The notes under the pieces were generated by a model. The model was not told where the DNA came from, did no database searches, and saw only the letters and a list, made by a program, of their open reading frames with translations. Shown piece after piece: positions 11,182 through 62,138 of a stretch of 64,000 nucleotides of DNA. The position numbers and the translations under genes were made by a program. The number at the start of each line of letters is the position of its first letter. Within the stretch, counting starts at the first letter, position 1. Origin of the DNA: Mytilus trossulus (taxonomy: Eukaryota); the NCBI RefSeq assembly GCF_036588685.1, contig NC_086382.1, positions 6,386,001-6,450,000 on the forward strand, in the 5' to 3' direction.

Positions 11182-11822
11182 AATAAACTCATCATAGATT
11201 TCAGGACAAAATTGTGTACATACGCCAGACGCGCGTTTCGTCTACATAAGACTCATCAGTGACGCTCGAATCCAAAAAAAGTTAAAAGGCCACACAAAGT
11301 CCGAAGTTGAAGAGCATTGACGATAAAAATTCCTAAAATTTTTGCCAAATACAGCTAAGGTAAGCTATGCCTGATGTAGAAAAGCCTTAAAATTTAAAAA
11401 ATTCAAAATTTTGTAAACAGTTAATTTATAAATATAACCATATCAATAATAATTCATGTCAGCACGAAAAGTGCTGACTACTGGGCTGGTAATAACCTCG
11501 GGGAAATAGATCTCCACCAGCAGTGGCATCGACCCAGTGGTTGTAATAAAACTCATCATAGATATCAGGACACAATTTTGTACATACGCCACACGCGTGT
11601 TTCGTCTACATAAGACTCATCAGTGACGCTCGAATCCAAAAAAAGTTAAAAGGCCAAATAAAGTCCGAAGTTGAAGAGCATTGACGATCAAAATTCTTAA
11701 AGTTTTGCCAAATACAGCTAAGATAATCAATGCCTGAGGTAGAAAAGCCTTATAATTTCAAAAATTCAAACATTTAGTTTATAAATATAACCATATCAAT
11801 GATAATTCATGTCAGCACAAAA
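11182..11822 (-). mobile_element. Retrozyme-like family B tandem (364-bp period, about 1.8 units)
   Basis: Hammerheads at 11222-11265 (intact, GUC) and 11586-11629 (GUG triplet, predicted inactive). Confidence 0.85.
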
Positions 11823-15033: not shown

Positions 15034-17379
15034 ATGTCATCAGTCACTTACATAGTAGACAGAAATAGCAGGGTTCATGCTGCACAAGTTAGCAATTTTA
15101 AATATTTCATTTCCGGGACTCTTTGTAGCATTGTACCATTTTTGGTATATCACAGTTCCAATACCATACTAGACCCTTATTTTGCAATAGTTGTTTGTCA
15201 AATCACATCAGTTTTTGTTTCAATGTTGGTACCAATGCAAATGAGATTCATATTTCGTTATATGATACCAATTATAATTGTTCCATTTGAATTTGAATAC
15301 TTACAAAGTGGATTACATCTAAAAACGTCAGTTGTCGGCAAAAGCTGCCAGCGGTACGGAGATCTTACACTTTTGCTGTTGCCAGCGTATTACATAGTGG
15401 ATGGATTCTATGTACGACTTGCTTTCGGAAATTTTGTGATTTTATTCAAAAAATGGTCGTTTCAATATAGGCACATACGAATTATTGGATATATCGCCTT
15501 GTGTCTTGTAAACGCAGTTACTCTAACTTACGTTATCTATATAGTTATCATTTACGTTTTCTATGGATGGTTATATTTTCTTGTGCGTTCTGACATTGAC
15601 AATTCTTCAATATCTGTAGAGGTAACGGATGTTTTTAGGTACAAAGATTATGCTTTGAAACCTCTGCAACCTTTTGAAAGAACAATTACCTGGGAAATAA
15701 ACCGCCACAATAGCAGTCATTCTTGGTCATATACAGGATATGATGCAAAATTTGATGATGATAAACTGCCAGTATGTAGAGGGATTTATTATAGAGTTGA
15801 GGGTGAAGATGTTGACATAACCTGTAATATTAATAACACGTATGGGATGGTTGAAGTAAATGAAAGCAACGAAACCAACTGCATGAGTTTTAATGTCTTT
15901 GACCATTTCCAATGGTACATAGGGAAAGGCTTGAGGGTCGGTTCATTGAAAGTATTAGCTACAACTGAACCAAATTATTTATCTATACTTACACTGCGAT
16001 TAACTGACTTAGTAGCTGAAAACTTCAAACAGGAAATAACTTTGTGGGGATCATTCAACCAAGAAGGAACATTAAAAGTCAAATTCGGATCATTCTTTAT
16101 ATACAGACAGAAACAAATATTTAAGTATGTCCATGTACCTCCAGGGCATATTGTATCATATATTGCATTGCCATTTTACAGTTTTTCCGATATTGATGTA
16201 CATGCGATAACCTATGACAGTATTCTTTTTTCGAAATATGCTCGAAATACTACCGGTGATACAAATGCCGTATATTTTGGCACTGATAAGGGTTGCGGAC
16301 CGATGATTAGTGTGCTGTTTGATTTGAGTAAGGTTGGGAATATATTCAATAAAAAACCGCTTTTATTGCACAGGATGTTAAATTCTATCCTCATTTCTTC
16401 TACTTTAACTGAAACTGGGAAACAAACAGTAAGTTCATACCAATGCGTTAGCGAACATAGTTATGGCAAACATACTTTCAGCATTATGACGTTCCGCTAT
16501 AACACTTTAAATAATATGTCGTATATGTCTGAGATTAAATTACCAAATACGTTTTTCGTCCTACCAAGGGGACTCACGCATTTTGCGCCGAACAAGTATA
16601 AAGAATTGCAAAATGACGTCAGAAAAGCAATAAATGAAGGAAAAAATGATTGGAGGGATCCTTGGAGATATTTTGTCGATGATCTACGTTTTGAATATTT
16701 CATTTCTTTCCATGTGCAAAAAGTCATTTTAATGATGATTTTGATTGAAAGTACCATCATTATAGGGATTTTTATCAAAGTTTACTGCAAAGTGTGTGTC
16801 CACCATTTAGCTAAAATGATATTAAAACCAAAATCTCCATTTGCCATACGCGATGAATTGCGTATTACTCAGACAAATATTGGGAACTTTGTCATTGATG
16901 ACAACATAACACATGACATTATGATAATCACTGCTAGAGATAGTGAAAATGATTATGCATTTGCAGTACAGAATCTTATTCCTTTCTTCGAGGATCTGAG
17001 ACTCTCCGTCCTATTTCCACAAACGGATATTCACTGTGGACAATCAAATATTAATGGTTATTCTCAAGCAGTGTTTTCGTCATTAATATATGTGGTTGTT
17101 GGAACTATAGATTTCGAAAATGACCCATGGAGCAATGGTTTTATTTTTTCCGATTTAATTCTATCCCAAATGTATGAGCAACAACAAAACCAGCATAGAA
17201 TCCTGTTGATAAAGTTTAGTGATGTGAACATCCCATACGCACTCACATGGAATGAACACGTTACAATAGCTAATTGGTCTATCAGACAAAGTGATGATGA
17301 CAATTACAGAACATTGAGAAACAAATTTAAATCCATGATTGAAGCACATCATTATGGCATCCTTAATGGAGTTGGGTAA
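15034..17379 (+). CDS. Intronless membrane protein with N-terminal hydrophobic segments, Ig-like ectodomain, TM helix and C-terminal TIR-like domain (IL-1R/TLR-related)
   Basis: 781-aa ORF in AT-rich DNA; EGEDVDITC...WY..LTLRLTDL Ig-like pattern; TM VILMMILIESTIIIGIFIKVYC; TIR-like boxes HDIMI, LFPQTDIHCG, SSLIYVVV...DPW, NYRTLR from 16912. Confidence 0.8.
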   Translation: MSSVTYIVDRNSRVHAAQVSNFKYFISGTLCSIVPFLVYHSSNTILDPYFAIVVCQITSVFVSMLVPMQMRFIFRYMIPIIIVPFEFEYLQSGLHLKTSVVGKSCQRYGDLTLLLLPAYYIVDGFYVRLAFGNFVILFKKWSFQYRHIRIIGYIALCLVNAVTLTYVIYIVIIYVFYGWLYFLVRSDIDNSSISVEVTDVFRYKDYALKPLQPFERTITWEINRHNSSHSWSYTGYDAKFDDDKLPVCRGIYYRVEGEDVDITCNINNTYGMVEVNESNETNCMSFNVFDHFQWYIGKGLRVGSLKVLATTEPNYLSILTLRLTDLVAENFKQEITLWGSFNQEGTLKVKFGSFFIYRQKQIFKYVHVPPGHIVSYIALPFYSFSDIDVHAITYDSILFSKYARNTTGDTNAVYFGTDKGCGPMISVLFDLSKVGNIFNKKPLLLHRMLNSILISSTLTETGKQTVSSYQCVSEHSYGKHTFSIMTFRYNTLNNMSYMSEIKLPNTFFVLPRGLTHFAPNKYKELQNDVRKAINEGKNDWRDPWRYFVDDLRFEYFISFHVQKVILMMILIESTIIIGIFIKVYCKVCVHHLAKMILKPKSPFAIRDELRITQTNIGNFVIDDNITHDIMIITARDSENDYAFAVQNLIPFFEDLRLSVLFPQTDIHCGQSNINGYSQAVFSSLIYVVVGTIDFENDPWSNGFIFSDLILSQMYEQQQNQHRILLIKFSDVNIPYALTWNEHVTIANWSIRQSDDDNYRTLRNKFKSMIEAHHYGILNGVG

Positions 17380-19222
17380 CATATTGTTATTCTACGTTTC
17401 TTATTAATTTAATTTTCCACTTTTTTTTCTAACTGATATCAACCAATTTTAATGTAGGTATATCATAATGTTAAACAGCATGTGCAGATTTACATACAGG
17501 TATATGATTTTCAAGATGGCTACCGTTACCATGGAAACTGTAACGATACGAAAAAATCTACATTATCAATAATCTTTCATGATAAGACCTAACTAAATCA
17601 AACTTTATGGAATTATTCCTGGGCAAGCATATATTAAAATTTGTAATTTGTAGACTATATAAATATATAAATACAACAGGCTATCATTTCAACTTGGATT
17701 TTTGTGTATTTATGGAATTTGCATAATTTCTTGCTTGAAATTTTTAATAAATTCTATGTTTAATTTGTATTATAATGTGTTGAGCGGTGCATAACACTTT
17801 CCATACATGATATTTTTCATAGATAGTGTTGTGCGCGGCACAGTACATTCTATTGAAAATGTTCTGTTTTTTTGTAATAGGTAGTGTTATGCGCAGCACA
17901 GAACATCATAATAATCATGGAATTTATTAAAATTTCAAGCACAAGAAATTGTGCAAATTCCGTAATTAAAGATAATTCCAAGTTGAAAGAATAGCCTGTT
18001 ATAAAACGGCTTGATATAAGTAAACAGTCTTTCTAACGAGGGCGCTGGATCGTTACGAGTAACCAAAATGTTCCAAACTTGATAAATTACAAAAATGTTA
18101 ATTGGGATGTGTAGATGCGCTGTTTCAATTTTGGAAATATCCAAAATTGCTGCTGTTACCCTAGCAATTAGAAGACGAGTACGCCATCCGCAACTACTAA
18201 CATTGCAAATATGTGTATGTTCGTGTTGCTTTTGTTCAGACTTGCATTTGTTCATCTCGTGACAGCTTTGTTATGATTCGGAACATGTAGCTGAGAAAAA
18301 GAAAACTATCATGACCTTTTTGACCCTATATATTTATAAAATAAAATTTATAATATAGTCCTTATACTGTTAAAAGTCAGTATTTTCGAAAAGTGTCATT
18401 AACGTAACTGATGACATGATATATAGAAATAAGAAGAAGTGGTATGAGTTTCAATGAGACAACTCGCCATCGAAGTCACAAGTGTAAAAGGCAACTAACT
18501 ATAGGTCCTTATACGGCCTTGGGCTTTGCTCATTGTTGAAGGCCGAACGGTGACCTATAGTTGTTAATGTTTGTGTCATTTTGGTATTTTGTGGATAGTT
18601 GTCTCATTGGCAATCATACCACATCTTCTTTTTATATGTGTAGCAAGCTATAAAGGCCCCAACAAAGACTCAGAACACGCAGAAATATCAACGGTATGTA
18701 CGTAAAGCAATGTAAACAAAGAAAAACCAATCGACATAAATGATGACAGAGGAATAAATGGAAAAAAACAAATATGACAAACAGCAGCCAGACACGCCTC
18801 CTGACTTTAGACAGACACACATATACTTCTTGTATGGCGGAATACAATATCCTCAAACCTTGACAGTACAAATAAAGACGAACTGTATTAACTAATTGGA
18901 TTTCAGATCGAAATGAAGCACGAGAAGAAAAAGTAACAAAAAAGAAAAGACACAAGTACCTTACACAAACAGAAATCAGGCTAAAATACCAATCAATTTA
19001 GATCCAAAGATTATGATAGTTTCTGTGTGTGTTACATTTTTGTGTTATGTCGTTGTTCTCCTCTTATATTTAATGCGTTTCCCTCGGTTTTAGTTTATTA
19101 CCCCGATTTTGTTTTTTGTCCATGGATTTATGAGTTTTGAACAGCGGTATACTACTGTTGCCTTTATTTAATAACATAGAAATCAGCAAAATGTCCGCTT
19201 TAAAATCAAGTAATTCTCATCG

Positions 19223-19343: not shown

Positions 19344-19562
19344 TTCTCATCGGTGAAACAATACTACAACAAAAAATGTAAAATAACCAATAAGAGTCTT
19401 ATATATACATCACACTCAAATGGAAGGAAATTATGTAATATTTAAACCATCCATAAGATTAAAGAAAAGGAATGCATTACAGTTTAAAATATATATATAT
19501 TCTATCTAACAAAAAACTACATGTTCTAAAGACATATTGATTCTTCCATTCCGAGGAAACTT

Positions 19563-19672
19563 CTACACACAATGACCAAATAGGCACCATTTCCCTGTGC
19601 TCGATGTTGATGGACATTTTATTTTTTTATTTACTGTGGCACATTTTGGATCACTCAGTGGTTCACAAATAC
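19563..19672 (-). CDS. Temptin-like gene 2, exon 3 (total about 147 aa)
   Basis: TTTTAG acceptor, phase 1: (G)ICEPLSDPKCATVNKKIKCPSTSSTGKWCLFGHCV*; homologous to the GICEP exons of genes 3 and 4. Confidence 0.85.
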
Positions 19673-20039
19673 CTAAAATAAAAAAAGTATATAATAAATT
19701 TGAAAAAAGTGAATTATTGATATAATTCATATTGCATTATTATGCAACGCCGATGTTATTTTATTTACCTTTTATTGCATACAGCCTTTCATTCTTATTA
19801 AAACACCTATCAATGTAACAAGTATTCATATGTAATCACTACAAAAAAGTTTCTGGACTGTTAGTCCATGGAAGTATTATGTCAATATAATGTTTCCATG
19901 GTTAGTCCAATCGGTTTTTATCAAGCCAATAATCAGTAAATGATTTATAACATTCCGGTCTTTGAATCTCTGTTGATCAAGTTAGAAATTATTTATGAAC
20001 CGAGACTCCATCTCCTTTTAATTTATAAAAAAAAAAACA

Positions 20040-20320
20040 CACAAGAATGTGTCCTAAGTACACGGATGTCCCATCTGGACTATCATTTTCTAATTCAGTG
20101 GACCATGAAAATGGGATAAAATCTCTAATTTGACATTTAAATTGGAAAGATCATATCATAGGGAACATGTTTTCTAAGTTTCAAATTGATTGGACTTCCA
20201 CTTCATCAAAAACTACCTCGACCAAAAACTTTAACCTGCAGCGGGACGAACGGACGGACGGTACAACGTATAGACGGACGCATAGATCAGAAAACATAAT
20301 GCCCATAATTGGGGCTTAAA
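20040..20320 (+). mobile_element. Helentron-associated (HINE-like) non-autonomous element
   Basis: ACAAGAATGTGTCC start, (CGGA)n microsatellite, 3' short palindrome GCCCATAATTGGGGC. Confidence 0.55.
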
Positions 20321-20622
20321 CATACCATAGATGAACTACGCAAACGTTTTTCTCCGCTTATATTTGATGTGTTTCCCTCTATTTTAGTTTGTTACTAGGA
20401 TTTGTGTTTTTTTCAATCGATTTATGAATTTCGAACAGCGGTATACTACTGTTGCCTTTATCTATTTTTTTGGTGGTAATTAAATTATTCTTATGTTCAG
20501 GTAAATAAGGCAACAGAAGTATACCACTTTTCAAAAGTCATAAATCGTTTAAAAGAAACAAATTAATGTGTGTTACAAACTTAAAACAAAGGGAAACACA
20601 TCCACTGACATCTTACTTCAAT

Positions 20623-21098
20623 AATAGTTATCAAAGGTTCCAGGATTATAATTTAGTACGCCAGACGCGCGTTTCGTCTTCATAAGACTCATCAGTGACG
20701 CTCATATCAAAACATTTATAGAGCCAAATAAGTACAAAGTTGAAGAGCATTGAGGATACAAAATTCCAAAAAGTGGTGCCAAATACGGCTAAGGTAATCT
20801 ATGCCTGGGATAAGAAATCCTTAGTTTTTGATAAATTCAAAATTTTGTAAACAGGAAATTTATAAAAATGACCACATTATTGATATTCATGTCAACACCG
20901 AAGTGTTGACTACTGGGCTGGTGATACCCTCGGAGACGAAACGTCCACCAGCAGTGGCATCGACCCAGTGGTGTAAATAGTTATCAAAGGTTCCAGGATT
21001 ATAATTTAGTACGTCAGACGTGCGTTTCGTCTTCATACGACTCATCAGTGACGCTCATATCAAAATATTTTTAAAGTCAAATAAGTACAAAATTGAAG
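20623..21098 (-). mobile_element. Retrozyme-like family B tandem (353-bp period) in intron 2 of temptin gene 2, sense to the gene
   Basis: Two hammerheads at 20658-20701 and 21011-21054, both with CUGAUGA/GAAA/GUC intact. Confidence 0.88.
20658..20701 (-). ncRNA. Type I hammerhead ribozyme, family B
   Basis: RNA GCGUCA-CUGAUGA-GUC-UUAUGAA-GAC-GAAA-CGCGCG-UC-UGGCGU; helix III palindrome ACGCGCGU. Confidence 0.88.
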
Positions 21099-21191
21099 GA
21101 ATTGTTTCATTGCGAAGATATATTTGTTCCGCATAATACTTGATTCCCCAAGAACAAAACTATTGATAATTATAAACCAATTGCTCAGAAA

Positions 21192-22026
21192 AACAATTGA
21201 AGGTCTTTCCACCATATAAGATCTTTTTTTATATTAAAATATTAAAAATCAGTCTAAAATGTCCGTTCCTATGGATAAATGATGTATAAATATGAATTGA
21301 AAGCAAAGGTCAAAATCTAGAACGTCCTATTAACCAATGACCTTGACCCCATTTTCATGGACACAAAAGTTAAATCACTTTAAGCATAACTCTAAATATA
21401 AGATTGGCAAAAACTTCCATTTATTGTTTACGTAACATTTCAGCCAAAATTTATAAGTAACGACATGTCACAACTAACAATTTAGTCAAAATAATTTGTA
21501 GATATCTTATATGTATTTTGAAAATAAATGAAATAAGCCAAAATCTAAATTTATAATATGATCTTGACCTTTGACCCTGACCTTATTTTCATTTTTTTGG
21601 ACCAAGGACCTTAAACTAAAAGACCCTAGGTCTCTATCACTTATGGGTTACCAGTTAGAAATGCATATTACTAATATCAAATGCATAAGGGGAAATAACT
21701 CTCATATGAAGAGTGTATATCGCTTTAGTTAAAATAGGACAAATCATGTGAAGAATATAACAAATAAAATTGCCGTAAACTTTTACGGTTGCGAAGGAGT
21801 AGCGGACACAACGAAAACAGTGTTTGGGGAGATAACTCTTACAAAGAAAATTGTTCATCTTAGCAGGGTGAAATTTAAAAGCGTATAAACTATACGATAC
21901 TATTTTTAAAATATCTAAGCGACATATTGCAAAACAAAAATTTCAAAATGTGGCGGGAATTTTTTTTTAATAATAATCAGAAGAAAAACAATAGGTCTTT
22001 CCACAGAAAAGTGGAAAGACCTAATA
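21192..22026 (+). mobile_element. HINE-like element
   Basis: AGGTCTTTCCAC near both ends and 3' hairpin AGGTCTTTCCACAGAAAAGTGGAAAGACCT. Confidence 0.55.
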
Positions 22027-22248
22027 AATTAAAAGTTCCTTGGAACAAACATTACATAATATTATTTACACCTTAATAATAATATTATTCACACCTTAAT
22101 AATAATATTATTTACACCTTAATAAGATATTAATTTCCTGGAACTAAAACGTCATATGGTTTCATAAAATTTGTTCCTTTAATGAAAGAGTGTCGTTTGA
22201 TTTTTTACATCTGCTTACATGTTAGTTAATGTTCACCTGTAATCATAT

Positions 22249-22430
22249 TGTAACTGGAGAACATGATTCTACTTGCAAAATCGCATGTCTCCACCGGGAC
22301 TCGAACCCGGGACCTCTGTGTTATTAGGCAGCGCGCTAACCGATTGAACTAAAAAAGCACTTCCTTCGCTCAACCGTTTACGGCTGACTAAGTATCTACC
22401 ACATGTTCTAAGGAACGCAATCCCGTCACA
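22249..22430 (-). mobile_element. 182-bp solo LTR containing a tRNA-like sequence (Helenus-type TRIM)
   Basis: TG...CA termini with short inverted repeats, ATAT duplicated at 22245-22248 and 22431-22434. Confidence 0.75.
22286..22358 (-). pseudogene. tRNA-Ile(AAT)-like sequence inside the solo LTR; not a functional tRNA
   Basis: A box TAGTTCAATCGG, CTAATAA loop, T arm CCGGGTTCGAGTCCCGG intact; acceptor and anticodon stems defective. Confidence 0.75.
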
Positions 22431-22943
22431 ATATAGTAGATATTTCAAGAACTTAAATCATCTAATGACCATGATAACTATTCCTGGAACATTTATAATA
22501 AAGTCAATATTCAAATCTGATGTACAGTAGTTGTCGTTTGTTTATGTAATATATACGTGTTTCTCGTTTCTCGTTTTGTTTATATAGATTAGACCGTTGG
22601 TTTTCCCGTTTGAATGGTTTTACACTAGTAATTTTGGGGCCCTTTATAGCTTGTTGTTCGGGGTGAGCCAAGGCTCCGTGTTGAAGGTCGTAATTTAACC
22701 TATAATGGTTTACTTTTTAAATTGTTATTTGGATGGAGAGTTGTCTCATTTGCACTCACATCACATCTTCCTATATCTATGGAACTTTTATAATGTAACA
22801 AATATTCCTTATGTAATATTTTATCCACTGTGAAGGAAATAGCATTGGAAAGTTCCAACTAGATCTTTTGTTATATGCTTAAAGTTCTTTGGAACAAAAA
22901 TTATGTTTGGGACTTATATTCTGTCACACCCTGTCCTCCTTAC

Positions 22944-23094
22944 CTGGGTGACCAGATGCAGCGGCACTAGGAGTTCCACCTTTTTTCCATGTACAATCAG
23001 GGTCTCCAAGTTCTTCACCATTTGTACGACCATCTTGGTCTGAATCTTTTTGACACAAATCTTTTGTCCATTCAAATATAGCGCCCTTAAAGTC
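22944..23094 (-). CDS. Temptin-like gene 2, exon 2
   Basis: AG|DFKGAIFEWTKDLCQKDSDQDGRTNGEELGDPDCTWKKGGTPSAAASGHPG|GTAAG; 151 nt. Confidence 0.9.
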
Positions 23095-24582
23095 CTGCAT
23101 AGTTAAGAACAACAGTTTACAGATTATTCAGATCAGACGATCAAGAACTAAAGCAGGGTTTTCATATCGTTTCCAATAGAAAATTTTCATATTACTAACT
23201 TATCAAGCTGATTTACATGTATTTCAATGTTATATTAACACTGGCTTATGTAAGGCAGATAATCATATTGCCACGAAGAAGGAAGTGTGACGACAAATTA
23301 GTCAAAATTCGGTAATATGAAAATTAAATTTTCAAAAGCTAATATAAGAATTAAATAAATGTTCTAACAGTTTAACGAATATGCGATACACAATTACAGG
23401 AAGATTTATATGTCACTTATCAAAATGGTAGGGGGGAAGCGTAATTTATACTGATATTAGAACAGTGTATTATTACATGCCTAATATTTAGGCAAGAAAA
23501 AGTTACTAGACGTCAATTTCGAAAAATTTATATTGATTAAGTCTAATACGTCTTAAATTGCAAACTTTTTGTCATTGATGAAAATTTGAGGCAGATCCGC
23601 CAAAAACGCTAATGAACCTTAGTTATAGCGGAAAGGCGGAGGAGCAGCGGTTTTCCATAACATGTTTACTGTTTAGCAGTAAACTATATAGTAAAAATGT
23701 CTACAGAACTGCAGGACACATTTTTTTTTTATTAATTAGACGATAATTAAAAGCTTTCCAATTATTTAACAGATATCGTAAAATAAATTACTTATTTTTA
23801 CATTTCAATATTTTATTGATATATAAATGAGAATTTGTGACACCATTGCCAATATCCATTATATATAAAATGAGAATGTATTGTTTGCATAAAGGTGGTA
23901 TTGAAGTATAAATTAAAAATGATATAATTTGTTCATAATTTGGCAAAACATAGTATATGAAGACCTGTTGGTGACCTTCTGCTGTCGTCTGCTCAATGGT
24001 CGGGTTGTTGTCTCTTTGACACATTCCCCATTTCCGTAATCAATTTTATATATTGTGATATCCCCCCCCCCCAAAAAAAAAAAATAATGATACGTCACCG
24101 TTAATTTCCTCAAGCTGCATGATGTGACAAAATGACACATTTTGTATGGATTATACATGGGGAACACATCATTTTGTGATAAGAAGCTATACTAAATGAT
24201 AGAATTGTAAAATAATAGTTTATAGAAAATTCTTTGGGAATGCCAAAAGAACAGATAGAGTCACCGTACGTTTTATCCGGCTAAGATACTAAATGGTCAA
24301 ATTTCAATTTTTCTTCAGAAAATGCAATATTTCAAAGTTACAACCCCTGAAATGTTAACACATTAAAAAGCAAGCAAAAATAGCCATGCTTGTACAAATA
24401 TTGATATTGATAAGTGTAACTCTTGTTCTTTTTAAAAATGAGAATTCACATTAGTTATCTGCATTCCTGCATTAAATTTTGCTTACTTGATGGCAAATTT
24501 GAACCTTATGTTCTCTTTTATTTACAATCACAAATGGCGAAAGACGCCCATACTATTTTAATATGAATAAGTGATCATGATG

Positions 24583-24920
24583 ATAAAATTGAGAAAGGAA
24601 ATGGTGAATATGTCAAAGCGACAACCACTCGACCATAGAGCAAACAACAGCCGAAGGCAACCAATGGGCCTTCAATGTAGCGAGAATTCCCGCACCCGTA
24701 GGTGTCCTTCAGCTGGCCCCTAAAATATGCATAATAGTACAGTGATAATGGACGTCATACTAAACTCCGAATTATACACAAGAAATTAGAATTTAAAATC
24801 ATACAAGTCTAACAAAGGCCAGAGGCTCCTGACTTGGGACAGGCGCAAAATTGCGGCGGGGTTAAACATGTTTGTGAGATCTCAACCCTCCCCCTATACC
24901 TCTAGCCAATGTAGAAAAAT
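24583..24920. repeat. Dispersed SINE-like repeat (related copies near 5083-5175, 23959-24050, 57420-57575)
   Basis: Shared GGAAAT.G.GAAT.TGTCAAAG.GACAAC.AC.CGACCA motif. Confidence 0.65.
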
Positions 24921-24964
24921 AAAAGAATAATGAGAATTTATTGGTAATAAGAAGATATTTTTAC

Positions 24965-25147
24965 CAGTCCAAATTGATTTCTAGGCCCTCCACCTGGTGC
25001 CTGGTCGTGTCCTACTCCTTTCCATATCTCACCAGTCTGTCCGCTGCAAGGATCTGGTACATTATTACCATTTGGAATATCATTTCTAAACCATGGAAAT
25101 CCAAAAACAACAGCTGCCAAGGCTAAATATACAATTTCTCTGAACAT
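24965..25147 (-). CDS. Temptin-like gene 2, exon 1
   Basis: MFREIVYLALAAVVFGFPWFRNDIPNGNNVPDPC...GVGHDQAPGGGPRNQFGL|GT; 183 nt, same length as gene 1 exon 1. Confidence 0.9.
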
Positions 25148-28100
25148 GACCGCTCTGTTGAAGTACTTCAAAACTATGAAAGTGTGTTTGTCTCCCTTTG
25201 CAAGAAATCACATGGAATGGTTCAGTCTTTATCTGGCCTTATGTAAAGTAACTACAGTGGAACCTGTGTCAATCGTAACCGTATCTTTGTGTGCCTCAAT
25301 TTTGTTAAGTTATATAAAAGTTTGGTTTGAAGAGATACAAAAGAGGGACTAAAGATGCCAAAGGGATAGTCAAACTCAAAGATTGAAAATAAACTGACAA
25401 CGCCATGGCTAAAAGTAAAAATACAAACAAACAAAAAATTGTACAGAAGACAAAACATAGAAAACTAAAGACTAAGCAACACAAACCCCACCAAAAACTG
25501 CGGTGGATATCAGGTGCTCCGGAAGTGTAAGCAGATCCCGCTCCACTTGTGACACCCGTCGTATACTATCCTGTCCGCTTTTTCAATATTTTGACATCAC
25601 CGGATGCGACTAATCAGATTTTTAATTACAATAGGCAACATGATGAGCGTCACTAGTGGAGCAGGATCTGTGTTCCCTTTGGAAGATCACCCTCGGGGTT
25701 TTTTTTCGGTTCGTGTTTCTAAGTATAGTTTTAAATTTGAAGACTGTTGTATATGTTTTCGTCGTTTTTGTTTTTTAGCAAGGTATTGTTGGTTTTTGTG
25801 CAATTTTATTTGCCCTTATTCCTTGGTATATTTCTCCTTATTTATACTGCGTACAACAAGTGCCCGTCTTCTGTTGCCTCATTATGATTCATTTATATAT
25901 GTATATATACAGAGAGAGAAATAAATTAAATTATGTTTTAAGCTATGAAGCCTCCATTTTTTTTTATATGTAGCCCTGGTTGTGGGGATCAGTTACAATC
26001 ATGGAGAAATCGAAGTGTGTAGTTTATTAAGAATGACGGACTAAAGTTAAATTTTGAATTTTTAAAATTAAGAAAAAAAAATTAATACTATAAGTTGAAG
26101 GAGCATCAGTTAATGAACAAAATAAACTAAAAAGTATTGATCAATAGGTTAGGGAGTTCCGTTTTTAGATATTTGAGTTTTAAAAATGGTGGGAAAAGGC
26201 TTACAAGTACTTTTACCTTACATTTGCATTGGTATCACTTGGGTCTCATTTGCTGCTTTAATTTGAAAATTGACCTTTTATGAGCTATTGAAGTCTTTTA
26301 TGAAAATACAAATGGTTGTAATGGGGCAAAATATTTTACCAAGTATGGTTGGAAAAAGACCAAGGAGTCCGAACATCTGACACTAATTTCCAAAACCTCG
26401 CCTAGGAACAACGAGACAACAACCCGTACACATGTACATTAACGCTATGACCAAGTGAAATATGAAAGAGCCCATTGTTTTAATCGGTTTGGAAACAGCC
26501 TGATAGGCTGTTTACAGGTTTAACTGTTTAAGTATCTGCTCCGATTCCTATGACCTTTTGTTTGTTCTTATTTCATGGACATTCGGTGTTATCTTAAATT
26601 CTACATTTCCGTAGATGTCACTATCTGGGTCTTATATAAGTACATCTAGACGAAGTTATGTAAGAAATTTAGAATTATAGAGACTATATGATATATTGTT
26701 ACGATAAAGCATGGTCATAAAAAAAAACACTATACATTGGTTTCCAAAGACTATAGAAAGAACATTTTAACAAATATATACCATTTTAGGTGGATGCAAG
26801 GAGTACAATTTAACACTTTTTCTCAAACCCAAACGACAAACATATTATGTCCCTCATACTAATCGTACATGGAGAGAGATAATCTGATAGCATCGTAGGC
26901 TATGTCAATTCACATTTGGTGGATGAATGGGTGGATTGAGATCCTTTTCTAACAGAAAAAAATTGTATTTTTCCTTATAAAAGGAAAGAATGTTTACTTA
27001 AAACACTCAAACACGTTAAAAGAACTAACTGGTCTAACTTAGCTTCAGAAACATTCTTAAGACACAAAAAAATAGATTTTTATTCAAGTAAAAAAATATC
27101 TTTGAATAAAGACTATTTTCCATTGAAACACATCCGATGCGTCCAATTGTGATAGTTGATAACGTATGTACCACATTCTTGAAGACTATATATACATTTA
27201 CAATAAACTGGACACTTGTTGTTTTCCTTCGTCGCTACACTAACCTTCGGAGCAGACATTTGGATTGAATGGCGGACAGGTTTAACATTTACCCTTCACC
27301 GAAATACAGTCATTTATAAATAATACATGTTCTATAATATATATAATAAAATATGTATGACCTTAAAAATACCGTGTTAATCAATGTTGAGATTGACATG
27401 AAACAGCTCTCAATTATTCCTCAATAGACTTTTTTTTTAAATTATTACAGAATCTTCCTTTACTCCGTGAACCAATAGATTATGCAAAATTGTTAATGAA
27501 ACATGCACCAATTTAAGTAACAACAGTACTAACAAAATTCTCGTACATGGTGTACTCAACATAGCACGCATATTTTGCCATACCTTTCTATGCTTAAAGC
27601 AAAATGACTGCCCCTTAAATGTAAATCTCTTGAAAAGGTTATGAAAAATGATTATAAACCAACGAGATATTAACTTAACACCAATATAAGTACGTTATGC
27701 ATTGTCAATCCCTTAGGAAATCAGTGCTATATATATATTTATATGTATTTGCTATGTTTTTGTTTTGGTGATTTATTTTCAGGGCGGGCTTTAAAGAAGC
27801 AGCAGTTAATTTTCAAGACAGTCCTAATTTCAACGTTTCTACCTTTTACGGATCCGTTGGTCCAGTTTAATGACATGATTTTAATGAGGTGCTCGTTTTA
27901 TACTGAGGGGGTCTCGGATATTATTAATTAACTCTCTGAGATTGCAAAATTTGACACTTTCCTAAAGCTTCTGTCTAACCAGCCAATGTGATAGTGAAGG
28001 ATTTGTTGAATACACTGGATAAGCTTGTTTCATAAATACGGATTAGTAAATGTATCTATAAAACCTATTTATAGCAGTATATACTAAACTACCATAATAT

Positions 28101-37531: not shown

Positions 37532-39436
37532 AGAGTGAACTCGTGTGCTCTGCAAAGTTCAGCAGGTTTCCAAAATAGTGTTACAGGCGAAGTTGATCAG
37601 AAGAAGTTAAATATGGTGATAGGATGCTTTCAGTGACATGACTTTAACGTGTTTTGGCGTACACATGTATACGCACTATCTGAGATGCTTTAATACCAAA
37701 CTTTATATTGGGTCAAACCCAGAACCTAACTGCAACTTATAATTTGTGCTATTAACTACGAGACCATCCGTATAAAATTTGAATCTAAACTATACATTCC
37801 ATTCTCAATTTTATACAAAGAAACAACAAAATTATTCACAATTTACTCTGTATTCAAAAGTCTTATCTATATAAATTTAACATATATTATCATCTGAGGT
37901 CCCAATGTATCAATCAAACTGTAACCTTTCTGATGTTATAATTTGTATGTTCTTCTGTATACTTTTGTATATACAGCGGTTTATCAGAATTAAGTATATA
38001 TATTATATTTAAGTTGAAAAGAAACCGAGACTTCAACTTATAAACCACAATCAATGCTCCAAATACCGAGTCTGGAAATTCTTAGTCTCCGAGACATCAT
38101 ATATATGTGCCATAAACGGTCAGCCAAGTCATGATGATGTCCCTAAATTTAAAGCGATTGGGATGTGGTTGGATTGCTGGCGCCCAGATATTTAACCCAC
38201 ATATTTTGAGTTAATAAAGAGATACATGGAACACGTCTATGAGAAAGCAACCCAACGAAATAAATTACCAACTAAACGTAGAGGTAAACACAATGTCTTC
38301 AGCAATAGTGTGTATAAATCATACCAAGCTCTTATAATCACTATGAAGTATATTTTATACAAACAAGAAATAAAAAAGAGAGAGCAACTTTGGCACTTTA
38401 TCGGTCAGACCTAAACAGATAAAGAATATGGAACATGTAAACACGGCGGGTCTCAAAATTTGGACAGCAACTGCTTTTTCCGGTTATAAAATTTAATGTT
38501 GTATGTGTCCACTTATGTTGGTATAGTGTACTCTGTCAATTAATGAAATAATCTGCACTGTCACATATGGAAGAGGCAGCATACCTTTTTAATTGTAAGA
38601 TATATCATTTCTGAGCATAAAATCGTCCCACACAAAAAAAATCCATTCACTTCACTCGGCAGTAGTTATTCCGTTTCATGTAAATACACACCCTTTTCAA
38701 TCATGGATCCGCCCTGTTCTGTTTAACGTTGTTGTTACATTTATATTTAACATCAAACTTATCTGGTTCTGGTGGATTAATTGTATTTGATAGTAGCTAG
38801 AAATATAATCATACTAGTACATTTCGTCTCAAAGTTTATGTTGTCCAATACTAATTGCAACTTTTGTCAAAGGTTTGTTTCTTACAATATCGCGTCTGTT
38901 CATTGTACAGATATCTTATACGGCATCGATTAAATAATCGCATTGTTATAGCGTCTGATATATAAAACTCTGTGAGTTTAGTCTGTTTATGTGATATCCA
39001 TTTGAAGTGACTCTCATGACTTTTAAACTGGTGCGCACGACTTTTAAAAGTATGTGCACGACTTCGAAAATGCATCCCATCATTGTGTTATTGATCTGTA
39101 TTTCTTTATTTCATTTTGCTTACGTGCTTTGTCTATATGACTTTTTTTGTTTCTTTGATCTTTTTTAGAAGAAATCCATACTAAGCATATACATGTCGAG
39201 AAGAAGAACAAGGGAAACTTCTAATTGGGGTTCTGCAGAGGATGTGCCTTCAATTAGTTTATATCTACCTGTGTGACGTCAAACGCGATTCTACATCAGA
39301 GTTAATGTTAATCTAAGCATGTGTCTGTCAAGGTAAGGAGTCAGTCCCTGTACTTAAAAAATCTTTCAATCCTTTATGGGTAGATTTTACATATGAATAA
39401 AATCGGATAATAAAAAAGACAACGAATGAGGTTGTT

Positions 39437-39530
39437 AATAGTTATCAAAGGTATCAGGATTATAATTTAGTACGCCAGACGTGCGTTTCGTCTACATTAA
39501 ACGCATCAGTGACGCTCATGTCAAAATATT
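39437..39530 (-). repeat. Truncated family B retrozyme-like copy, ribozyme core mutated
   Basis: AATAGTTATCAAAGG...TACGCCAGACGTGCGTTTCG...CGCATCAGTGACGCTC. Confidence 0.75.
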
Positions 39531-39622
39531 TAAATTTAAAGTTGTTAAGTTTGATGTATCATAATGCCTTTTAGGCTTCTTTGTTACATTTGTTTGTTTT
39601 ATGGTGATTAAGATAATGACAT

Positions 39623-40740: not shown

Positions 40741-41545
40741 AGTACCCCTATTATTATTTTTTTCTATTTTTACATATTTTGTCTGTTTGTTTTGTTCACG
40801 TATCGTTGTCAATATAATGGAATTTGATGCAACTGTCATACAAGTGAGAGATTTATCTGGTTATAAAACCAAGTTCAATCCACCATTTTCTACATAAGAT
40901 CATACTTAATTTATGCAGGAGTATGATAGCTGTTATTCATTCGTTTGGTGTGTTTGAGATTTTGAGTTTGCCATTATTTTGATTAGGGACTTTACTTTTT
41001 GAATTTTCCTCGGAGTTCAGTATTAATGTGATTCTACTTTTTCGGACCAAATGTATAATAGTAATTATATCTATGGTAGGACAAACGGAATATAATAGCT
41101 AACAAATTCGACATATAAAATGTAAATGTCCCCATGATATCTTCCGATTCGTTTTTATAATCCAAACTTCGCCACAAGTTAAGGACAAGTGCCACTTACA
41201 ACAAATACAATTTAATGTATATAGTAAAGGCAGTATTCAAATTTAAATATAAGAATAAAAAGATGTGATATGATTGTCAAGAAGACAATTCTCCACCAGA
41301 AACCATATGATAAAGAAGTTAGCGACTATATGTTATCAGACAGTTGTATCATATGTCTCTGATGTCACCGTACGGCCTTTAAAAATTAGCAAAACCCAAT
41401 ACCTCGAAATGATAAAATTAATGCTTTACAATTCACACGATAAATCTAACAATCTGATGTATGTACAAAACAACAAACAGAAAAAAAACTAAACTTACAT
41501 AGCAGGCATTGCCTGGGACAGGCACATACAGTCGACTTAGAATAT

Positions 41546-41727
41546 ATAGTTATCAAAGGTACCAGGATTATAATTTAATACGCCAGACGAGCTTCTCATC
41601 TACATAAGACTCATCAGTGACGCTCAGATCAAAACAGTTATAAAGCCAAACAAGTACAAAGTTGAAGAGCATTGAAGACACAAAATTCCAAAACGTTGTG
41701 CCAAATACGGCTAAGGTAATCTATTCC
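41546..41727 (-). repeat. Truncated family B retrozyme-like copy downstream of gene 4, GAAA core mutated
   Basis: Aligns to the 20623-20810 segment. Confidence 0.8.
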
Positions 41728-44095: not shown

Positions 44096-44239
44096 AATAG
44101 TTATCAAAAGTACCAGGATTATAATTTTATACGCCAGACGCGCGTTTCGTCTACATAAGACTCATCAGTGACGCTCAGATCAAAATAGTTAAAAAGCCAA
44201 ACAAATACAAAGTTGAAGAGCATTGAGGACCCAAAATTC
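44096..44239 (-). mobile_element. Truncated family B copy with intact hammerhead (44131-44174) upstream of gene 4
   Basis: ACGCCAGACGCGCGTTTCGTCTACATAAGACTCATCAGTGACGC, identical to 11222-11265. Confidence 0.85.
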
Positions 44240-60084: not shown

Positions 60085-61476
60085 ACGCAAAATCGCGAAG
60101 TCGAAAACGCAAAATCGAAAAGAAAAAATATTTCGCCTTTTCGCGTTTTCGACTTCGCGTTTTCAATTTTCGACTTCGCGATTTCGCGTTTTCGACTTCG
60201 CCCTATAGAATATGAAGTGTAAAATTGCCTTAACCGGCCACCATAAGATGTAGACATTTATTGAAAAGGTCTACTAGAGACGCACTGGCTTTTTAGATTA
60301 TTTATATTTTAAATTTGCTATCGGGGTTTATAGAACTTTGTTGAATTGGATTATCTCCCATATAACACTGTGGATGAAATTCTATATCCGTATTTATCTA
60401 GAGTGCATTTCTTTTTAACACAATCGATGCAAACGGCTAAGAGCGTACATGTTTTGATTATTTCTTTCAAACCTACGTTTGAAAAGTTTGCATAAACTTT
60501 GACAAACTATGCAAACGAACCTGATTAAACGAAGTATTTGTTTCTACGTTTGTAAAAGTTTGTTTACCATCAACAGGTGCATGCCTTATTAAAAGTTCAA
60601 ACAGGGTCAGTAAAGACTTATTAAACGATGTATTTGTTTCTACTTTTGTAGCGTTTAGAAAGAAAGAAAAAAACGCGACACAACGCTTACAAAAGAATTA
60701 GAAAGAAATGCGGCCATAGTTACAACCGGTATGACTGCACGTGCTATCCGTGACTATGCTGAACTAATACAAAGAAAATAAACGAGGAGTGTGACTGAAC
60801 TCTCAATGTCGTGGTTGTAGCATACACATATTATTATATGAATTGAGTGTTCCTCATAAAATACCATAAAGATTTAAAAGGACGCATTCAATTTTTAGAT
60901 GCAATCTCCCTTATTCTTATGCTTCAAAACTGTCATATTGACATTCTTCTTGTTCGTGAGTTGTCATCTTTTTCCAAATGATTTATATTTTGAAAGCAAT
61001 CTCTTTTGTCCGCTACAGAATAGCACATTAGTGCTGAAAATGTCTTTAAGCACCAACCAACCAATCAATCAATATTTTAAACTTCTTTTAATAGATCTAT
61101 ACGAAAATAAACAAAATATGGTATGATTGCCAAAGAGACAACTCTCAACAAGAGACGAAATGACACAGAAATTTACAATTATCGGTCATCGTACGGACTT
61201 CAACAATGATCAAAAGTTATACCACATAGTCGGCTATAGAAGGCCCTGAAATGACAGATGTAAAACAATCCAGACGAGGTGACTAACCTTTGGCTCTGTA
61301 CGCATATACATCCCGTCATTGTGTTATTGTGCTATGGTAATTTTTTGTATTATTGTCTATCATTTGTGCTACATGACTTCGTCTATATGACTTTTTGTGT
61401 TTCTTTGTTGCCTATTTGTTTGGTTTTTAGTGATTAAGAATATATGGTATTTTTGACTGCTGTACCCCTACTTTTT

Positions 61477-61626
61477 GGAATTTTAGATCCTTAATGCTTT
61501 TCAACTTCGTACCTGTTTGGCTAAAAATATAAATATTTTGATATGAGCGTCACTGATGAGTCTCTGATGAGATGAAACGCGCGTCTGGCGTACTCAATTA
61601 TAATTCTGGTTCCTTTGATAACTATT
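61477..61626 (+). mobile_element. Truncated family B copy with variant hammerhead (61547-61591)
   Basis: GCGTCA-CTGATGA-GTCTC-TGAT-GAGAT-GAAA-CGCGCG-TC-TGGCGT. Confidence 0.8.
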
Positions 61627-62138
61627 CGACATTTTTACCTATTATGTCTTTTCGGTTTGTTCATGCATTTTTGTCAATATATTGGAATTTAATTTGATTG
61701 TCATGCAAGTGAGAGGTTTAGCTAGCAATGTATAAACTCAGGTTTAATTCACCATTTTCTACACAAGAAAATGCCTGTACCAATTGCCATATTCCTGACT
61801 TAGAACAGACATGTTTGGTGTGTTTGAGCTATTGATTTTGACATTGGATTAGGGACTTTACGTTTTGAATTTTCCTCGGCGTTGTGATTTTAATTTAGAC
61901 TAGGATTATACAGGAAAACTAATATTTTCGTTAGAGAATCTCCGAAAACTATACACCGAAAATTTGTCTAAAGCAAAGCAAATGAACTTGAAGGTTTCAT
62001 AGTCAATATTAAAAATCTTTTCATAAAGCTAACAACAACAAAATTACATAGTCCAACTACATACAGGATGACCATTAACTGGAACACATTAGGGCGATTA
62101 AAAGGCAGGGAATATAGAAATCAGAGTCAACTGTGTGA

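What the first reader, a model, noticed from the sequence alone, without database searches (positions are those of the whole stretch)
20623..21098. Sense-oriented double hammerhead inside intron 2 of temptin gene 2
Seen: two family B hammerheads with intact cores (cleavage between 20664/20663 and 21017/21016) lie on the same strand as the gene, so they are part of its pre-mRNA and flank a 353-nt unit. The 21011 copy has one helix III mismatch but a fully paired helix I. Inference: host transcription could release a retrozyme monomer or circRNA and cut the intron co-transcriptionally, coupling retrozyme production to temptin expression or affecting exon 2-3 splicing.
Basis: partly seen in the sequence, partly recalled or inferred. 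Interest (0 to 1): 0.8.

Follow-up and report, generated by a model that had tools for sequence, protein, structure and literature searches.

The report
Ordinary mussel retrozyme copy in intron
Two self-cleaving hammerhead RNA motifs really do sit 353 bases apart, in the gene's own orientation, inside a confirmed intron of a temptin-like gene. They are one slightly decayed copy of a mobile element already described in mussels and present in thousands of copies, and nothing shows that it affects the gene.

Summary
Two type I hammerheads lie on the minus strand (21011-21054 and 20658-20701; Rfam RF00163 33.8 and 33.0 bits against a cut-off of 34). Both cores are intact, with GUC cleavage sites at 21017/21016 and 20664/20663, so the unit is 353 nt.

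The 476-bp block (20623-21098) is unit positions 272-353, one full unit, then positions 1-41. This is the usual 5'-truncated, fixed-3'-end form of a family with at least 4,764 first-look matches in this 1.3-Gb genome. Published Mytilus galloprovincialis retrozyme primers match it, and the published clone is also 353 nt, so it belongs to the known mussel non-LTR retrozyme.

The three-exon temptin model holds. Pfam Temptin_C covers exons 1 and 2, exon 3 is conserved in paralogs, and RNA contigs join exon 1 to 2 and, by depth arithmetic, exon 2 to 3. The element is therefore part of the pre-mRNA.

No evidence shows locus-specific cleavage, circle formation or any effect on splicing. The upstream hammerhead carries three private substitutions at family-invariant positions. 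The internal repeats have diverged to 91.5%. The paralogs' second introns lack the element.

This scan already holds 33 notes on intronic hammerhead retrozymes elsewhere in this genome. The kind is known and interest is low.

The parts
20623..21098 (-). Whole retrozyme insertion, 476 bp or 1.35 units: unit positions 272-353, then 1-353, then 1-41.
   Evidence: Homology limits to the unit and to genome copies.
21011..21054 (-). Upstream (5') type I hammerhead, cutting after C21017. The core is intact. It has three private substitutions in helices I, II and III.
   Evidence: Rfam RF00163 33.8 bits. Compared with 58 family hammerheads.
20658..20701 (-). Downstream (3') type I hammerhead, cutting after C20664. 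It matches the family majority except for one loop-2 base, which the upstream copy shares.
   Evidence: Rfam RF00163 33.0 bits..
20664..21016 (-). 353-nt unit between the two cleavage sites. This is the RNA that double cleavage would release.
   Evidence: Read. It is 93-96% identical to many genome copies. It differs from the majority of 45 other units at 11 of 353 positions. GC content is 38%.
21017..21098 (-). 5' partial repeat (unit positions 272-353), carrying most of the upstream hammerhead.
   Evidence: 91.5% identical to the same part of the adjacent full unit.
20623..20663 (-). 3' partial repeat (unit positions 1-41), ending at the family's fixed 3' terminus ...GATAACTATT.
   Evidence: The same terminus is seen in all 16 other loci whose 3' junction was read and in 5 shorter copies in the window.
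19673..22943 (-). Intron 2 of temptin-like gene B, 3271 nt (GT..AG) and almost entirely repeat-derived.
   Evidence: Splice sites read; phase checked. The exon 3 to exon 2 junction is inferred from RNA contigs. Repeat depth is 1e3-1e7 in the DNA runs against about 100-400 in unique parts.
22944..23094 (-). Exon 2 of temptin-like gene B.
   Evidence: Pfam Temptin_C profile positions 45-97, E 3.2e-20. RNA contig X6 record 30 joins it to exon 1.
24965..25147 (-). Exon 1 coding part (ATG at 25147), including the signal-peptide-like start.
   Evidence: Pfam Temptin_C profile positions 2-45, E 6e-10. RNA contigs X6 record 30 and X1 record 8.
19563..19672 (-). Exon 3, the Cys-rich tail ICEPLSDPKC..., with its stop at 19563-19565.
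   Evidence: Frame is consistent with exon 2 (phase 1). It is conserved in paralogs A, C and D. RNA contigs X1 record 1 and X6 record 24 both stop fitting at 19669 and then continue.

Best explanation
The block 20623-21098 is one ordinary, moderately old genomic copy of the known mussel non-LTR retrozyme, the 353-nt family cloned from Mytilus galloprovincialis by Cervera and de la Pena (2020).

As in the other copies examined, reverse transcription seems to have started at a fixed point about 41 nt downstream of the hammerhead cleavage site. It then ran a variable distance round a circular or multimeric RNA template, here 1.35 units. Any copy longer than about 430 nt therefore carries two hammerheads automatically.

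The copy landed, by chance in sense orientation, in intron 2 of a temptin-like gene. That intron has been inflated to 3.3 kb by many repeat insertions.

Shown:
- the element's identity, anatomy and strand;
- its place inside a spliced intron;
- the decay of the upstream hammerhead.

Inferred:
- The element is transcribed passively with the pre-mRNA.
- The intron is removed normally.
- At most a small fraction of pre-mRNA or excised intron is cut at one or both sites. [quoted passage not shown]
- Nothing has selected for this, and it has no measurable effect on temptin mRNA.
For: Identity:
- Rfam type I hammerhead hits with intact cores.
- The unit has 4,764 first-look candidates in the genome. 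These include long tandem arrays and many copies of the form 'one unit plus short partials', at 93-96% identity.
- Published mussel retrozyme primers 110R and 109R_HH match at 20905-20933 (1 mismatch) and 20664-20688 (2 mismatches), with 0 matches expected by chance.
- The published genomic clone Mg353 has the same 353-nt unit, and by eye a near-identical hammerhead.
- The paper describes about 5,000 hammerheads in two families within 350-390-bp repeats.

Insertion form:
- In all 16 other loci whose 3' junction was read, the 3' end lies within a few bases of ...GATAACTATT (unit position about 37-51, mostly 41-42). The 5' end varies from position 28 to 328.
- Five shorter copies in the window show the same pattern.

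Intron:
- Exon phases fit and Pfam Temptin_C covers exons 1 and 2.
- Exon 3 is conserved in three paralogs.
- RNA contig X6 record 30 joins exon 2 to exon 1.
- X1 record 1 and X6 record 24 leave exon 3 at 19669 with 74 and 25 letters over. The depths in bin 22946-23142 (1.12 and 6.86) equal exactly what those letters give if laid on exon 2.

No sign of selection at this locus:
- The upstream hammerhead has three private changes at positions 98-100% invariant in 58 relatives.
- The helix III trans duplex weakens from -13.3 to -7.9 kcal/mol. The double-hammerhead fold is the predicted optimum for two majority-type copies but not for this pair.
- Internal repeats are 91.5% and 97.6% alike, against 98-100% in several other loci.
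- Intron 2 of paralogs A, C and D is 570-775 nt and lacks the element.

Intronic copies are common:
- About 43% of retrozyme copies in Xenopus are intronic.
- This scan holds 33 notes on intronic hammerhead retrozymes in this genome (unchecked AI notes).
Against: - Both catalytic cores are intact and the downstream hammerhead is of the family's majority type, so some processing of the host transcript cannot be excluded.
- The published mussel clone, with a single hammerhead, self-cleaves in vitro at about 0.1 per min. The weakened double-hammerhead pairing therefore need not abolish activity.
- Animal retrozymes have no demonstrated promoter of their own in the papers read here. Host read-through of sense copies like this one could thus be a real source of the abundant circles.
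- The contig data cannot show RNA ends or rare variants, so absence of locus-specific retrozyme RNA is not shown.
- Six of the 7 family B copies in the window share the strand of the four temptin genes. This is not significant (two-sided binomial about 0.13).
Confidence: 0.8

Rival explanations
1. Passive by-product with real output. Whenever the temptin-like gene is transcribed, the two sense hammerheads cut a substantial share of the pre-mRNA or excised intron. The 353-nt monomer is ligated into a circle, so this locus feeds the retrozyme circRNA pool in the tissues where the gene is on. The gene itself is unaffected.
For: - Cores are intact and in sense orientation inside a confirmed intron.
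- The family's hammerhead self-cleaves in vitro, and family circRNAs reach up to 1% of mussel RNA.
- Spliced mRNA coexists with the element, as expected if slow intronic cleavage does not block splicing.
Against: - The upstream hammerhead has private changes in helices II and III at family-invariant positions, and the double-hammerhead pairing is predicted to be weaker.
- In run X1, which holds this gene's mRNA, all 12 RNA contigs covering 20832, where this unit's base occurs in none of the 45 other units sampled, carry the family base and not the locus base.
- mRNA contig depth is only 3-9, so any output would be tiny beside thousands of other copies.
Confidence: 0.15
2. Regulatory coupling. 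Hammerhead cleavage inside intron 2 lowers or tunes exon 2-3 splicing or causes early termination, so the insertion changes temptin output, or the released circle has a function tied to temptin expression.
For: There is only the anatomy: sense orientation, with cleavage sites 1.9 kb after the donor and 1.0 kb before the acceptor. Fast ribozymes in introns can inhibit splicing (Fong et al. 2009, as summarised in PMC2995048).
Against: - Correctly spliced mRNA is present in two RNA runs.
- The family's ribozyme is slow, about 0.1 per min, and slow hammerheads in introns did not impair splicing.
- The hammerhead is not conserved at this locus.
- Paralogs lack the element.
- The intron is a repeat dump.
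- Many other genes in this genome are noted with similar insertions.
Confidence: 0.04
3. Chance look-alikes: the two motifs are not ribozymes at all.
For: - Both fall 0.2-1.0 bit below Rfam's gathering score.
- The minimum-energy fold of each isolated 58-mer is not the hammerhead fold, and z-scores are not significant.
Against: - The full-length model matches with E about 1e-4 on the whole window.
- The box occurs 5 times against 0.02 expected.
- The sequence is near-identical to the hammerhead of a published, experimentally self-cleaving mussel clone.
- The motif is invariant across 58 copies.
Confidence: 0.01

Closest known systems
Metazoan non-LTR retrozymes of the mussel Mytilus galloprovincialis (Cervera and de la Pena 2020, NAR 48:5054, PMC7229834; clone 'Mg353')
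   Same: - The unit length is 353 nt.
- The type I hammerhead has the same core and, by eye, near-identical helices.
- Published primers match with 1-2 mismatches.
- GC content is low (38%).
- Thousands of copies occur as dimers up to long tandem arrays.
- There are no LTRs and no coding capacity.
   Different: Nothing essential differs. This copy is a 1.35-unit fragment with a partly decayed upstream hammerhead. The paper does not discuss location or orientation relative to host genes.
Intronic hammerheads of amniotes (RECK, CTCL and DTNB introns; de la Pena and Garcia-Robles 2010, EMBO Rep, cited in PMC7229834)
   Same: A hammerhead lies in sense orientation inside an intron of a protein-coding gene, so it is part of the pre-mRNA. 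A role in mRNA biogenesis has been proposed.
   Different: Those are single motifs that are ultraconserved at orthologous positions. Here there is a pair belonging to a high-copy mobile element. It is absent from paralog introns and shows private substitutions in one ribozyme.
Newt satellite 2, Schistosoma Sm-alpha and avocado sunblotch viroid 'double hammerheads'
   Same: Helix III is very short in cis (2 bp plus a tetraloop) with a palindromic centre (ACGCGCGU). Two copies can pair to form a stable 8-bp helix III, and this was the predicted optimum for two majority-type copies.
   Different: At this locus the pairing has an A.C mismatch (-7.9 against -13.3 kcal/mol). The published mussel clone also cleaves with a single hammerhead, so dimer dependence is not established.
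Penelope-like elements and their non-autonomous derivatives (preprint 10.64898/2026.07.22.740005)
   Same: Copies are 5'-truncated, partial-tandem and carry a hammerhead. Retrozymes are proposed there to be mobilised by Penelope-like reverse transcriptases, and about 43% of Xenopus copies are intronic.
   Different: I did not test any sequence relation between this unit and a Penelope-like element of this genome.

Membership tests
Type I hammerhead ribozyme (Rfam RF00163) | Conserved catalytic core: CUGANGA, GAAA, and a cleavage triplet NUH. | tested here: met
   Both copies have CUGAUGA, GAAA and GUC.
Type I hammerhead ribozyme (Rfam RF00163) | Three helices around the core, with helix I open (type I topology). 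| tested here: met
   Helix I has 6 bp and helix II 3 bp (upstream copy) or 4 bp (downstream copy). Helix III has 2 bp in cis, or 7-8 bp in trans between the two copies.
Type I hammerhead ribozyme (Rfam RF00163) | Score at or above Rfam's gathering cut-off of 34 bits. | tested here: not met
   Scores are 33.8 and 33.0 bits, which is 0.2-1.0 bit short. E-values are 1.3e-4 and 2.3e-4 on 64 kb.
Type I hammerhead ribozyme (Rfam RF00163) | Self-cleavage activity. | not testable with these tools
   A near-identical hammerhead in the published mussel clone cleaves at about 0.1 per min. This locus was not assayed.
Metazoan non-LTR retrozyme, mussel family | Repeat unit of 150-450 bp, one type I hammerhead per unit, at least two hammerheads in tandem. 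| tested here: met
   The unit is 353 nt with two hammerheads 353 nt apart.
Metazoan non-LTR retrozyme, mussel family | Many genomic copies, from dimers to long multimers. | tested here: met
   There are 4,764 first-look candidates, including arrays such as C1:113060-118410 and many short copies.
Metazoan non-LTR retrozyme, mussel family | Low GC content (under 45-50%), no LTR, PBS or PPT, and no coding capacity. | tested here: met
   GC content is 38%. Only ORFs of 52 aa or less lie in the block. Flanks of different copies are unrelated. PBS and PPT were not searched for specifically.
Metazoan non-LTR retrozyme, mussel family | Sequence relation to the published M. galloprovincialis retrozyme. 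| tested here: met
   Primers 110R and 109R_HH match with 1 and 2 mismatches against 0 expected by chance. I did not run a full alignment to clone Mg353, because its sequence is not window or locus sequence. I compared it only by eye.
Metazoan non-LTR retrozyme, mussel family | Expressed as a monomeric circular RNA. | tested here: inconclusive
   RNA-run contigs of the family cover the unit, but they are 7-9% unlike this locus. Contigs cannot show circles or ends.
Metazoan non-LTR retrozyme, mussel family | Highly self-paired predicted structure. | tested here: inconclusive
   The linear MFE is -80.5 kcal/mol (z -1.30). The circular MFE is -74.0 kcal/mol with 67% of bases paired (z -1.23; 23 of 200 shuffles fold as well).
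Functionally conserved intronic hammerhead (amniote type) | The ribozyme is conserved at the same intron position in related genes or species. | tested here: not met
   Intron 2 of paralogs A, C and D lacks it. The upstream hammerhead has three private substitutions. Orthologs in other species could not be examined.
Temptin-like gene (host) | Temptin domain, and a three-exon structure with the element inside an intron. | tested here: met
   Pfam PF24784 Temptin_C hits exon 1 (E 6e-10) and exon 2 (E 3.2e-20), together covering profile positions 2-97 of 98. Splice phases fit. RNA contigs support the junctions.

The most novel reading that the evidence does not exclude
Animal retrozymes may have no promoter of their own. 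Sense copies inside introns, like this one, would then be the real source of the very abundant retrozyme circular RNAs. The hammerheads would cut the circles' precursors out of host pre-mRNAs or excised introns, so that circle output follows host-gene expression tissue by tissue. This locus would be one small contributor, active where the temptin-like gene is on.
Probability: 0.12. Interest if true: 0.5.

Novelty: already known. Interest (0 to 1): 0.17.

Why it matters
Taken alone, it matters little. It is one more copy of a described, highly abundant mobile element, and hammerheads lying in sense inside introns have been discussed since 2010.

Its only wider value is as a convenient test locus. 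The host gene is small and expressed, the intron is confirmed, the downstream ribozyme is intact and the upstream one is slightly damaged. That allows a test of whether host transcription feeds the retrozyme circular-RNA pool, and whether a slow natural ribozyme in an intron disturbs splicing.

The family's insertion pattern, a fixed 3' end with a variable 5' end, is useful evidence for how these elements are copied into DNA. It is a property of the family, not of this locus.

Tried and rejected
- The default Rfam scan of the window was blank. The motifs only appear below the gathering score.
- Single-strand folding of each 58-mer did not return the hammerhead fold and was not better than shuffles. 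I took this as uninformative for such short helices and evaluated the hammerhead and double-hammerhead pairings explicitly instead.
- I looked for target-site duplications or a poly(A) tail at 17 insertions, counting this one, and found nothing convincing.
- I tested whether the hammerhead part of the unit is more conserved than the body among 45 close copies. It is not (0.984 against 0.980), because the sampled subfamily is uniformly young. This gives no argument either way.
- I tested whether L021, which has nearly the same architecture (271-353, full unit, 1-41), is a segmental duplicate of this locus. Its flanks are unrelated.
- I considered an orientation bias of retrozyme copies relative to the temptin genes. 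Six of 7 family B copies are on the minus strand, which is not significant. The 349-bp array in intron 1 of paralog A lies on the opposite strand.
- Laying reads at 90% likeness flooded the repeat-rich intron with contigs from other copies. No contig crossing 20623 or 21098 was listed, so presence or absence of the insertion in other individuals could not be judged.
- ARAGORN found no tRNA-like gene in 19400-25300.
Exons were translated and searched separately.
- I did not align the published Mg353 clone by tool, because its letters are not window or locus sequence.
- I neither built nor printed a consensus of the element.

Full report
**Observation**

On the minus strand of 20400-21400 the same roughly 60-nt motif occurs twice. 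It reads: GAGCGUCA (helix I, 5' strand), CUGAUGA, G-UC..GA-C (helix II), GAAA, C-GCRC-G-UC, the cut, then UGRCGU (helix I, 3' strand). The RNA between the cuts is 20664-21016, 353 nt.

- Rfam's type I hammerhead model (RF00163) matches both copies over its full length. Scores are 33.8 bits (21011-21054) and 33.0 bits (20658-20701). E-values are 2.5e-6 and 4.3e-6 on the local 1.2 kb and 1.3e-4 and 2.3e-4 on the whole window.
- Both are just under the curated cut-off of 34 bits, which explains the blank default scan.
- The box CTGATGAG-N(6-30)-CGAAAC occurs five times in the window against 0.02 expected.

**What the block is**

The 353-nt unit gave 4,764 first-look candidates in the window's own assembly (1.30 Gb, 541 contigs; the window is C10:6386001-6450000). 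Only 40 candidates were scored. They include long head-to-tail arrays, such as C1:113060-118410, and many short copies at 93-96% identity.

I fetched 19 other loci.

- Sixteen show the element's 3' junction. Every copy or array ends, in RNA sense, within a few bases of the same point, about 41-42 nt after the cleavage site (...GATAACTATT).
- The 5' end lies anywhere in the unit, at positions 28, 95, 111, 162, 235, 245, 251, 271, 289, 297, 326 and others.
- Five shorter copies in the window follow the same rule.
- I found no target-site duplication and no poly(A) tail.

This is the pattern of a retroelement copied from a fixed 3' start for a variable distance on a circular or multimeric template.

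The window block 20623-21098 is unit positions 272-353, then 1-353, then 1-41. It is a typical copy. Its 'double hammerhead' follows simply from being longer than about 1.2 units.

**Identity with a described family**

Cervera and de la Pena (2020, PMC7229834) report about 5,000 type I hammerheads in Mytilus galloprovincialis. They fall in two closely similar families, inside repeats of 350-390 bp. A cloned genomic repeat self-cleaves at about 0.1 per min. The repeats are expressed as circular RNAs reaching up to 1% of total RNA.

- Their supplement lists primers and a clone named Mg353.
- Primer 110R matches the unit at 20905-20933 with one mismatch.
- Primer 109R_HH matches at 20664-20688 with two mismatches. 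None is expected by chance.
- By eye, the Mg353 hammerhead and the conserved body segment are near-identical to the window unit. I did not align the clone by tool, because its letters are not window or locus sequence.
- GC content is 38% and the block has no ORF above 52 aa.
- The predicted structure is not significantly more stable than shuffles, whether linear (z -1.30) or circular (-74.0 kcal/mol, z -1.23). That family trait is inconclusive here.

**The host gene**

Four temptin-like paralogs lie on the minus strand. For the gene in question:

- Exon 1 is 25147-24965.
- Exon 2 is 23094-22944.
- Exon 3 is 19672-19563.
- The introns are GT..AG with consistent phases (0, then 1), and the coding length is 444 nt.

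Pfam Temptin_C (PF24784) covers profile positions 2-45 on exon 1 (E 6e-10) and 45-97 on exon 2 (E 3.2e-20). Exon 3 (ICEPLSDPKC...) is conserved after exon 2 in paralogs A (just outside the window, in L013), C and D.

RNA evidence comes, where only assembled contigs were available.

- In run X6, an RNA-seq library, record 30 joins 22941-23093 directly to 24964-25177. That is exon 2 spliced to exon 1, with one differing letter in each piece.
- X1 record 1 (185 nt, depth 3.2) fits 19559-19669 and has 74 letters left over.
- X6 record 24 (151 nt, depth 3.39) fits 19544-19669 and has 25 letters left over.
- The three bases at the break (gta) are the same at the start of exon 3 and at the start of intron 2.
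- If the left-over letters lie on exon 2 from 22941 upward, the bin 22946-23142 should have depth 3.2 x 69/197 = 1.12 in X1. In X6 it should have 8.68 x 148/197 + 3.39 x 20/197 = 6.86.
- These are exactly the tabulated values.

I conclude that exon 2 is spliced to exon 3 at the predicted sites. The element therefore lies in a real intron, on the transcribed strand.

**State of the two ribozymes**

I compared them with 58 hammerhead-containing 60-mers from 22 other loci.

- The downstream copy differs from the majority only at one loop-2 base. The upstream copy shares that base, which argues for a common template.
- The upstream copy has three private changes at positions that are 98-100% invariant:
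  - U to G, which removes the fourth pair of helix II;
  - G to A at the centre of the palindrome ACGCGCGU that forms helix III;
  - G to A in helix I, which turns a G.U pair into A-U.
- In cis, helix III is only 2 bp closed by a tetraloop. In trans, two copies can form 8 bp.
- For two majority-type copies, the predicted optimum of the pair is the classical double hammerhead (-31.1 kcal/mol). For the actual pair it is not.
- The helix III duplex drops from -13.3 to -7.9 kcal/mol.
- The published single-hammerhead clone does cleave, so this weakening need not be fatal. Activity at this locus remains untested.

**Age and selection**

- The repeated parts of the block are 91.5% alike over the 82-nt 5' partial and 97.6% alike over the 41-nt 3' partial.
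- In five other loci (L017, L021, L022, L023 and L024) the 5' partial is 98-100% identical to the adjacent full unit.
- The full unit differs from the majority of 45 other units at 11 of 353 positions.
- The copy has therefore aged by a few per cent since insertion, and the upstream hammerhead has decayed at least as fast as the rest.
- Intron 2 is about 570, 745 and 775 nt in paralogs A, C and D and has no retrozyme there. Here it is 3271 nt.
- Nearly all of 19991-22945 has repeat-level depth in the DNA runs, 1e3-1e7 against about 100-400 in unique parts.
- The retrozyme is one of many insertions that inflated this intron.

**Is this locus a source of retrozyme RNA?**

- RNA-run contigs cover the unit, but those listed differ from the locus by 7-9% (X1 record 2 and X6 record 25).
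- At 20832 this unit's base occurs in none of the 45 other units sampled. There, all 12 X1 contigs carry the family base.
- Contigs drop rare variants and show no ends, so this does not prove the locus is silent. It only means there is no positive evidence.

**Mechanism**

The most likely picture is passive. The element is transcribed with the pre-mRNA, and the intron is spliced out normally. A slow ribozyme cuts at most a fraction of the pre-mRNA or the excised intron.

Published experiments, summarised in PMC2995048, found two things. A hammerhead cutting within an intron left splicing efficiency unchanged (Dye et al. 2006). Only a fast ribozyme blocked splicing (Fong et al. 2009). This fits the presence of spliced mRNA here.

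A regulatory coupling to temptin has no support.

**Context and verdict**

- In Xenopus about 43% of retrozyme copies are intronic (preprint 10.64898/2026.07.22.740005).
- This scan already holds 33 notes on hammerhead retrozymes in introns elsewhere in this genome, several of them in sense orientation (unchecked AI notes).
- The finding is real but ordinary, a copy of an already known element.
- The open general question is whether host transcription of sense intronic copies feeds the circular-RNA pool. It cannot be settled with the contig data available here.

Noticed in passing
L014-L032 and window 39433-39532, 41543-41727, 44096-44239, 61470-61626: Copies of this retrozyme family end within a few bases of one 3' point, about 41-42 nt after the hammerhead cut (...GATAACTATT). 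This holds at every 3' junction read. Their 5' ends are scattered across the unit, and I saw no target-site duplication or poly(A) tail. This suggests reverse transcription from a fixed start on a circular or multimeric RNA. L032 appears to begin exactly at the cleavage site, and L025 within a few bases of it.
   Followed up: partly
Rfam finds no hammerhead there at E <= 0.1. Each unit does have a CTGATGA...GAAAT box on the plus strand.
   Followed up: partly
window 20366-20602: A long, AT-rich inverted repeat of about 240 nt (MITE-like hairpin) starts 20 nt downstream of the retrozyme's 3' end. It draws weak plant-miRNA-precursor hits in Rfam. Its left arm is repeated at 19051-19170 (family D17).
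   Followed up: no
window 20461-20465 joined to 20621 or 20973-20977, in DNA runs X19 and X20: Several DNA contigs join the end of the hairpin's left arm directly to the retrozyme's 3' terminus (table 5). The matching sides are short (19-48 nt), so this may be repeat noise. It could also hint at a preferred insertion context.
   Followed up: no
L013:9665-9763 (window -335 to -237): Exon 3 of temptin paralog A aligns to exon 3 of the gene studied at 71% identity. The alignment has a two-residue gap and an in-frame stop, so paralog A may be a pseudogene or may end differently.
   Followed up: no
window 11228-11818: A second two-hammerhead retrozyme copy of 1.65 units with 364-bp spacing lies on the minus strand in the intergenic space between temptin paralogs A and B. 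It is 78-80% identical to the intron copy, so it belongs to a different subfamily.
   Followed up: no
window 62027-63100 and beyond: A large tandem array shows spacings of 42 nt and of 31 plus 11 nt, with 62 overlapping 300-nt copies reported (family D1).
   Followed up: no
window 15034-17379 (+): An intronless 781-aa ORF lies on the opposite strand between temptin paralogs.
   Followed up: no
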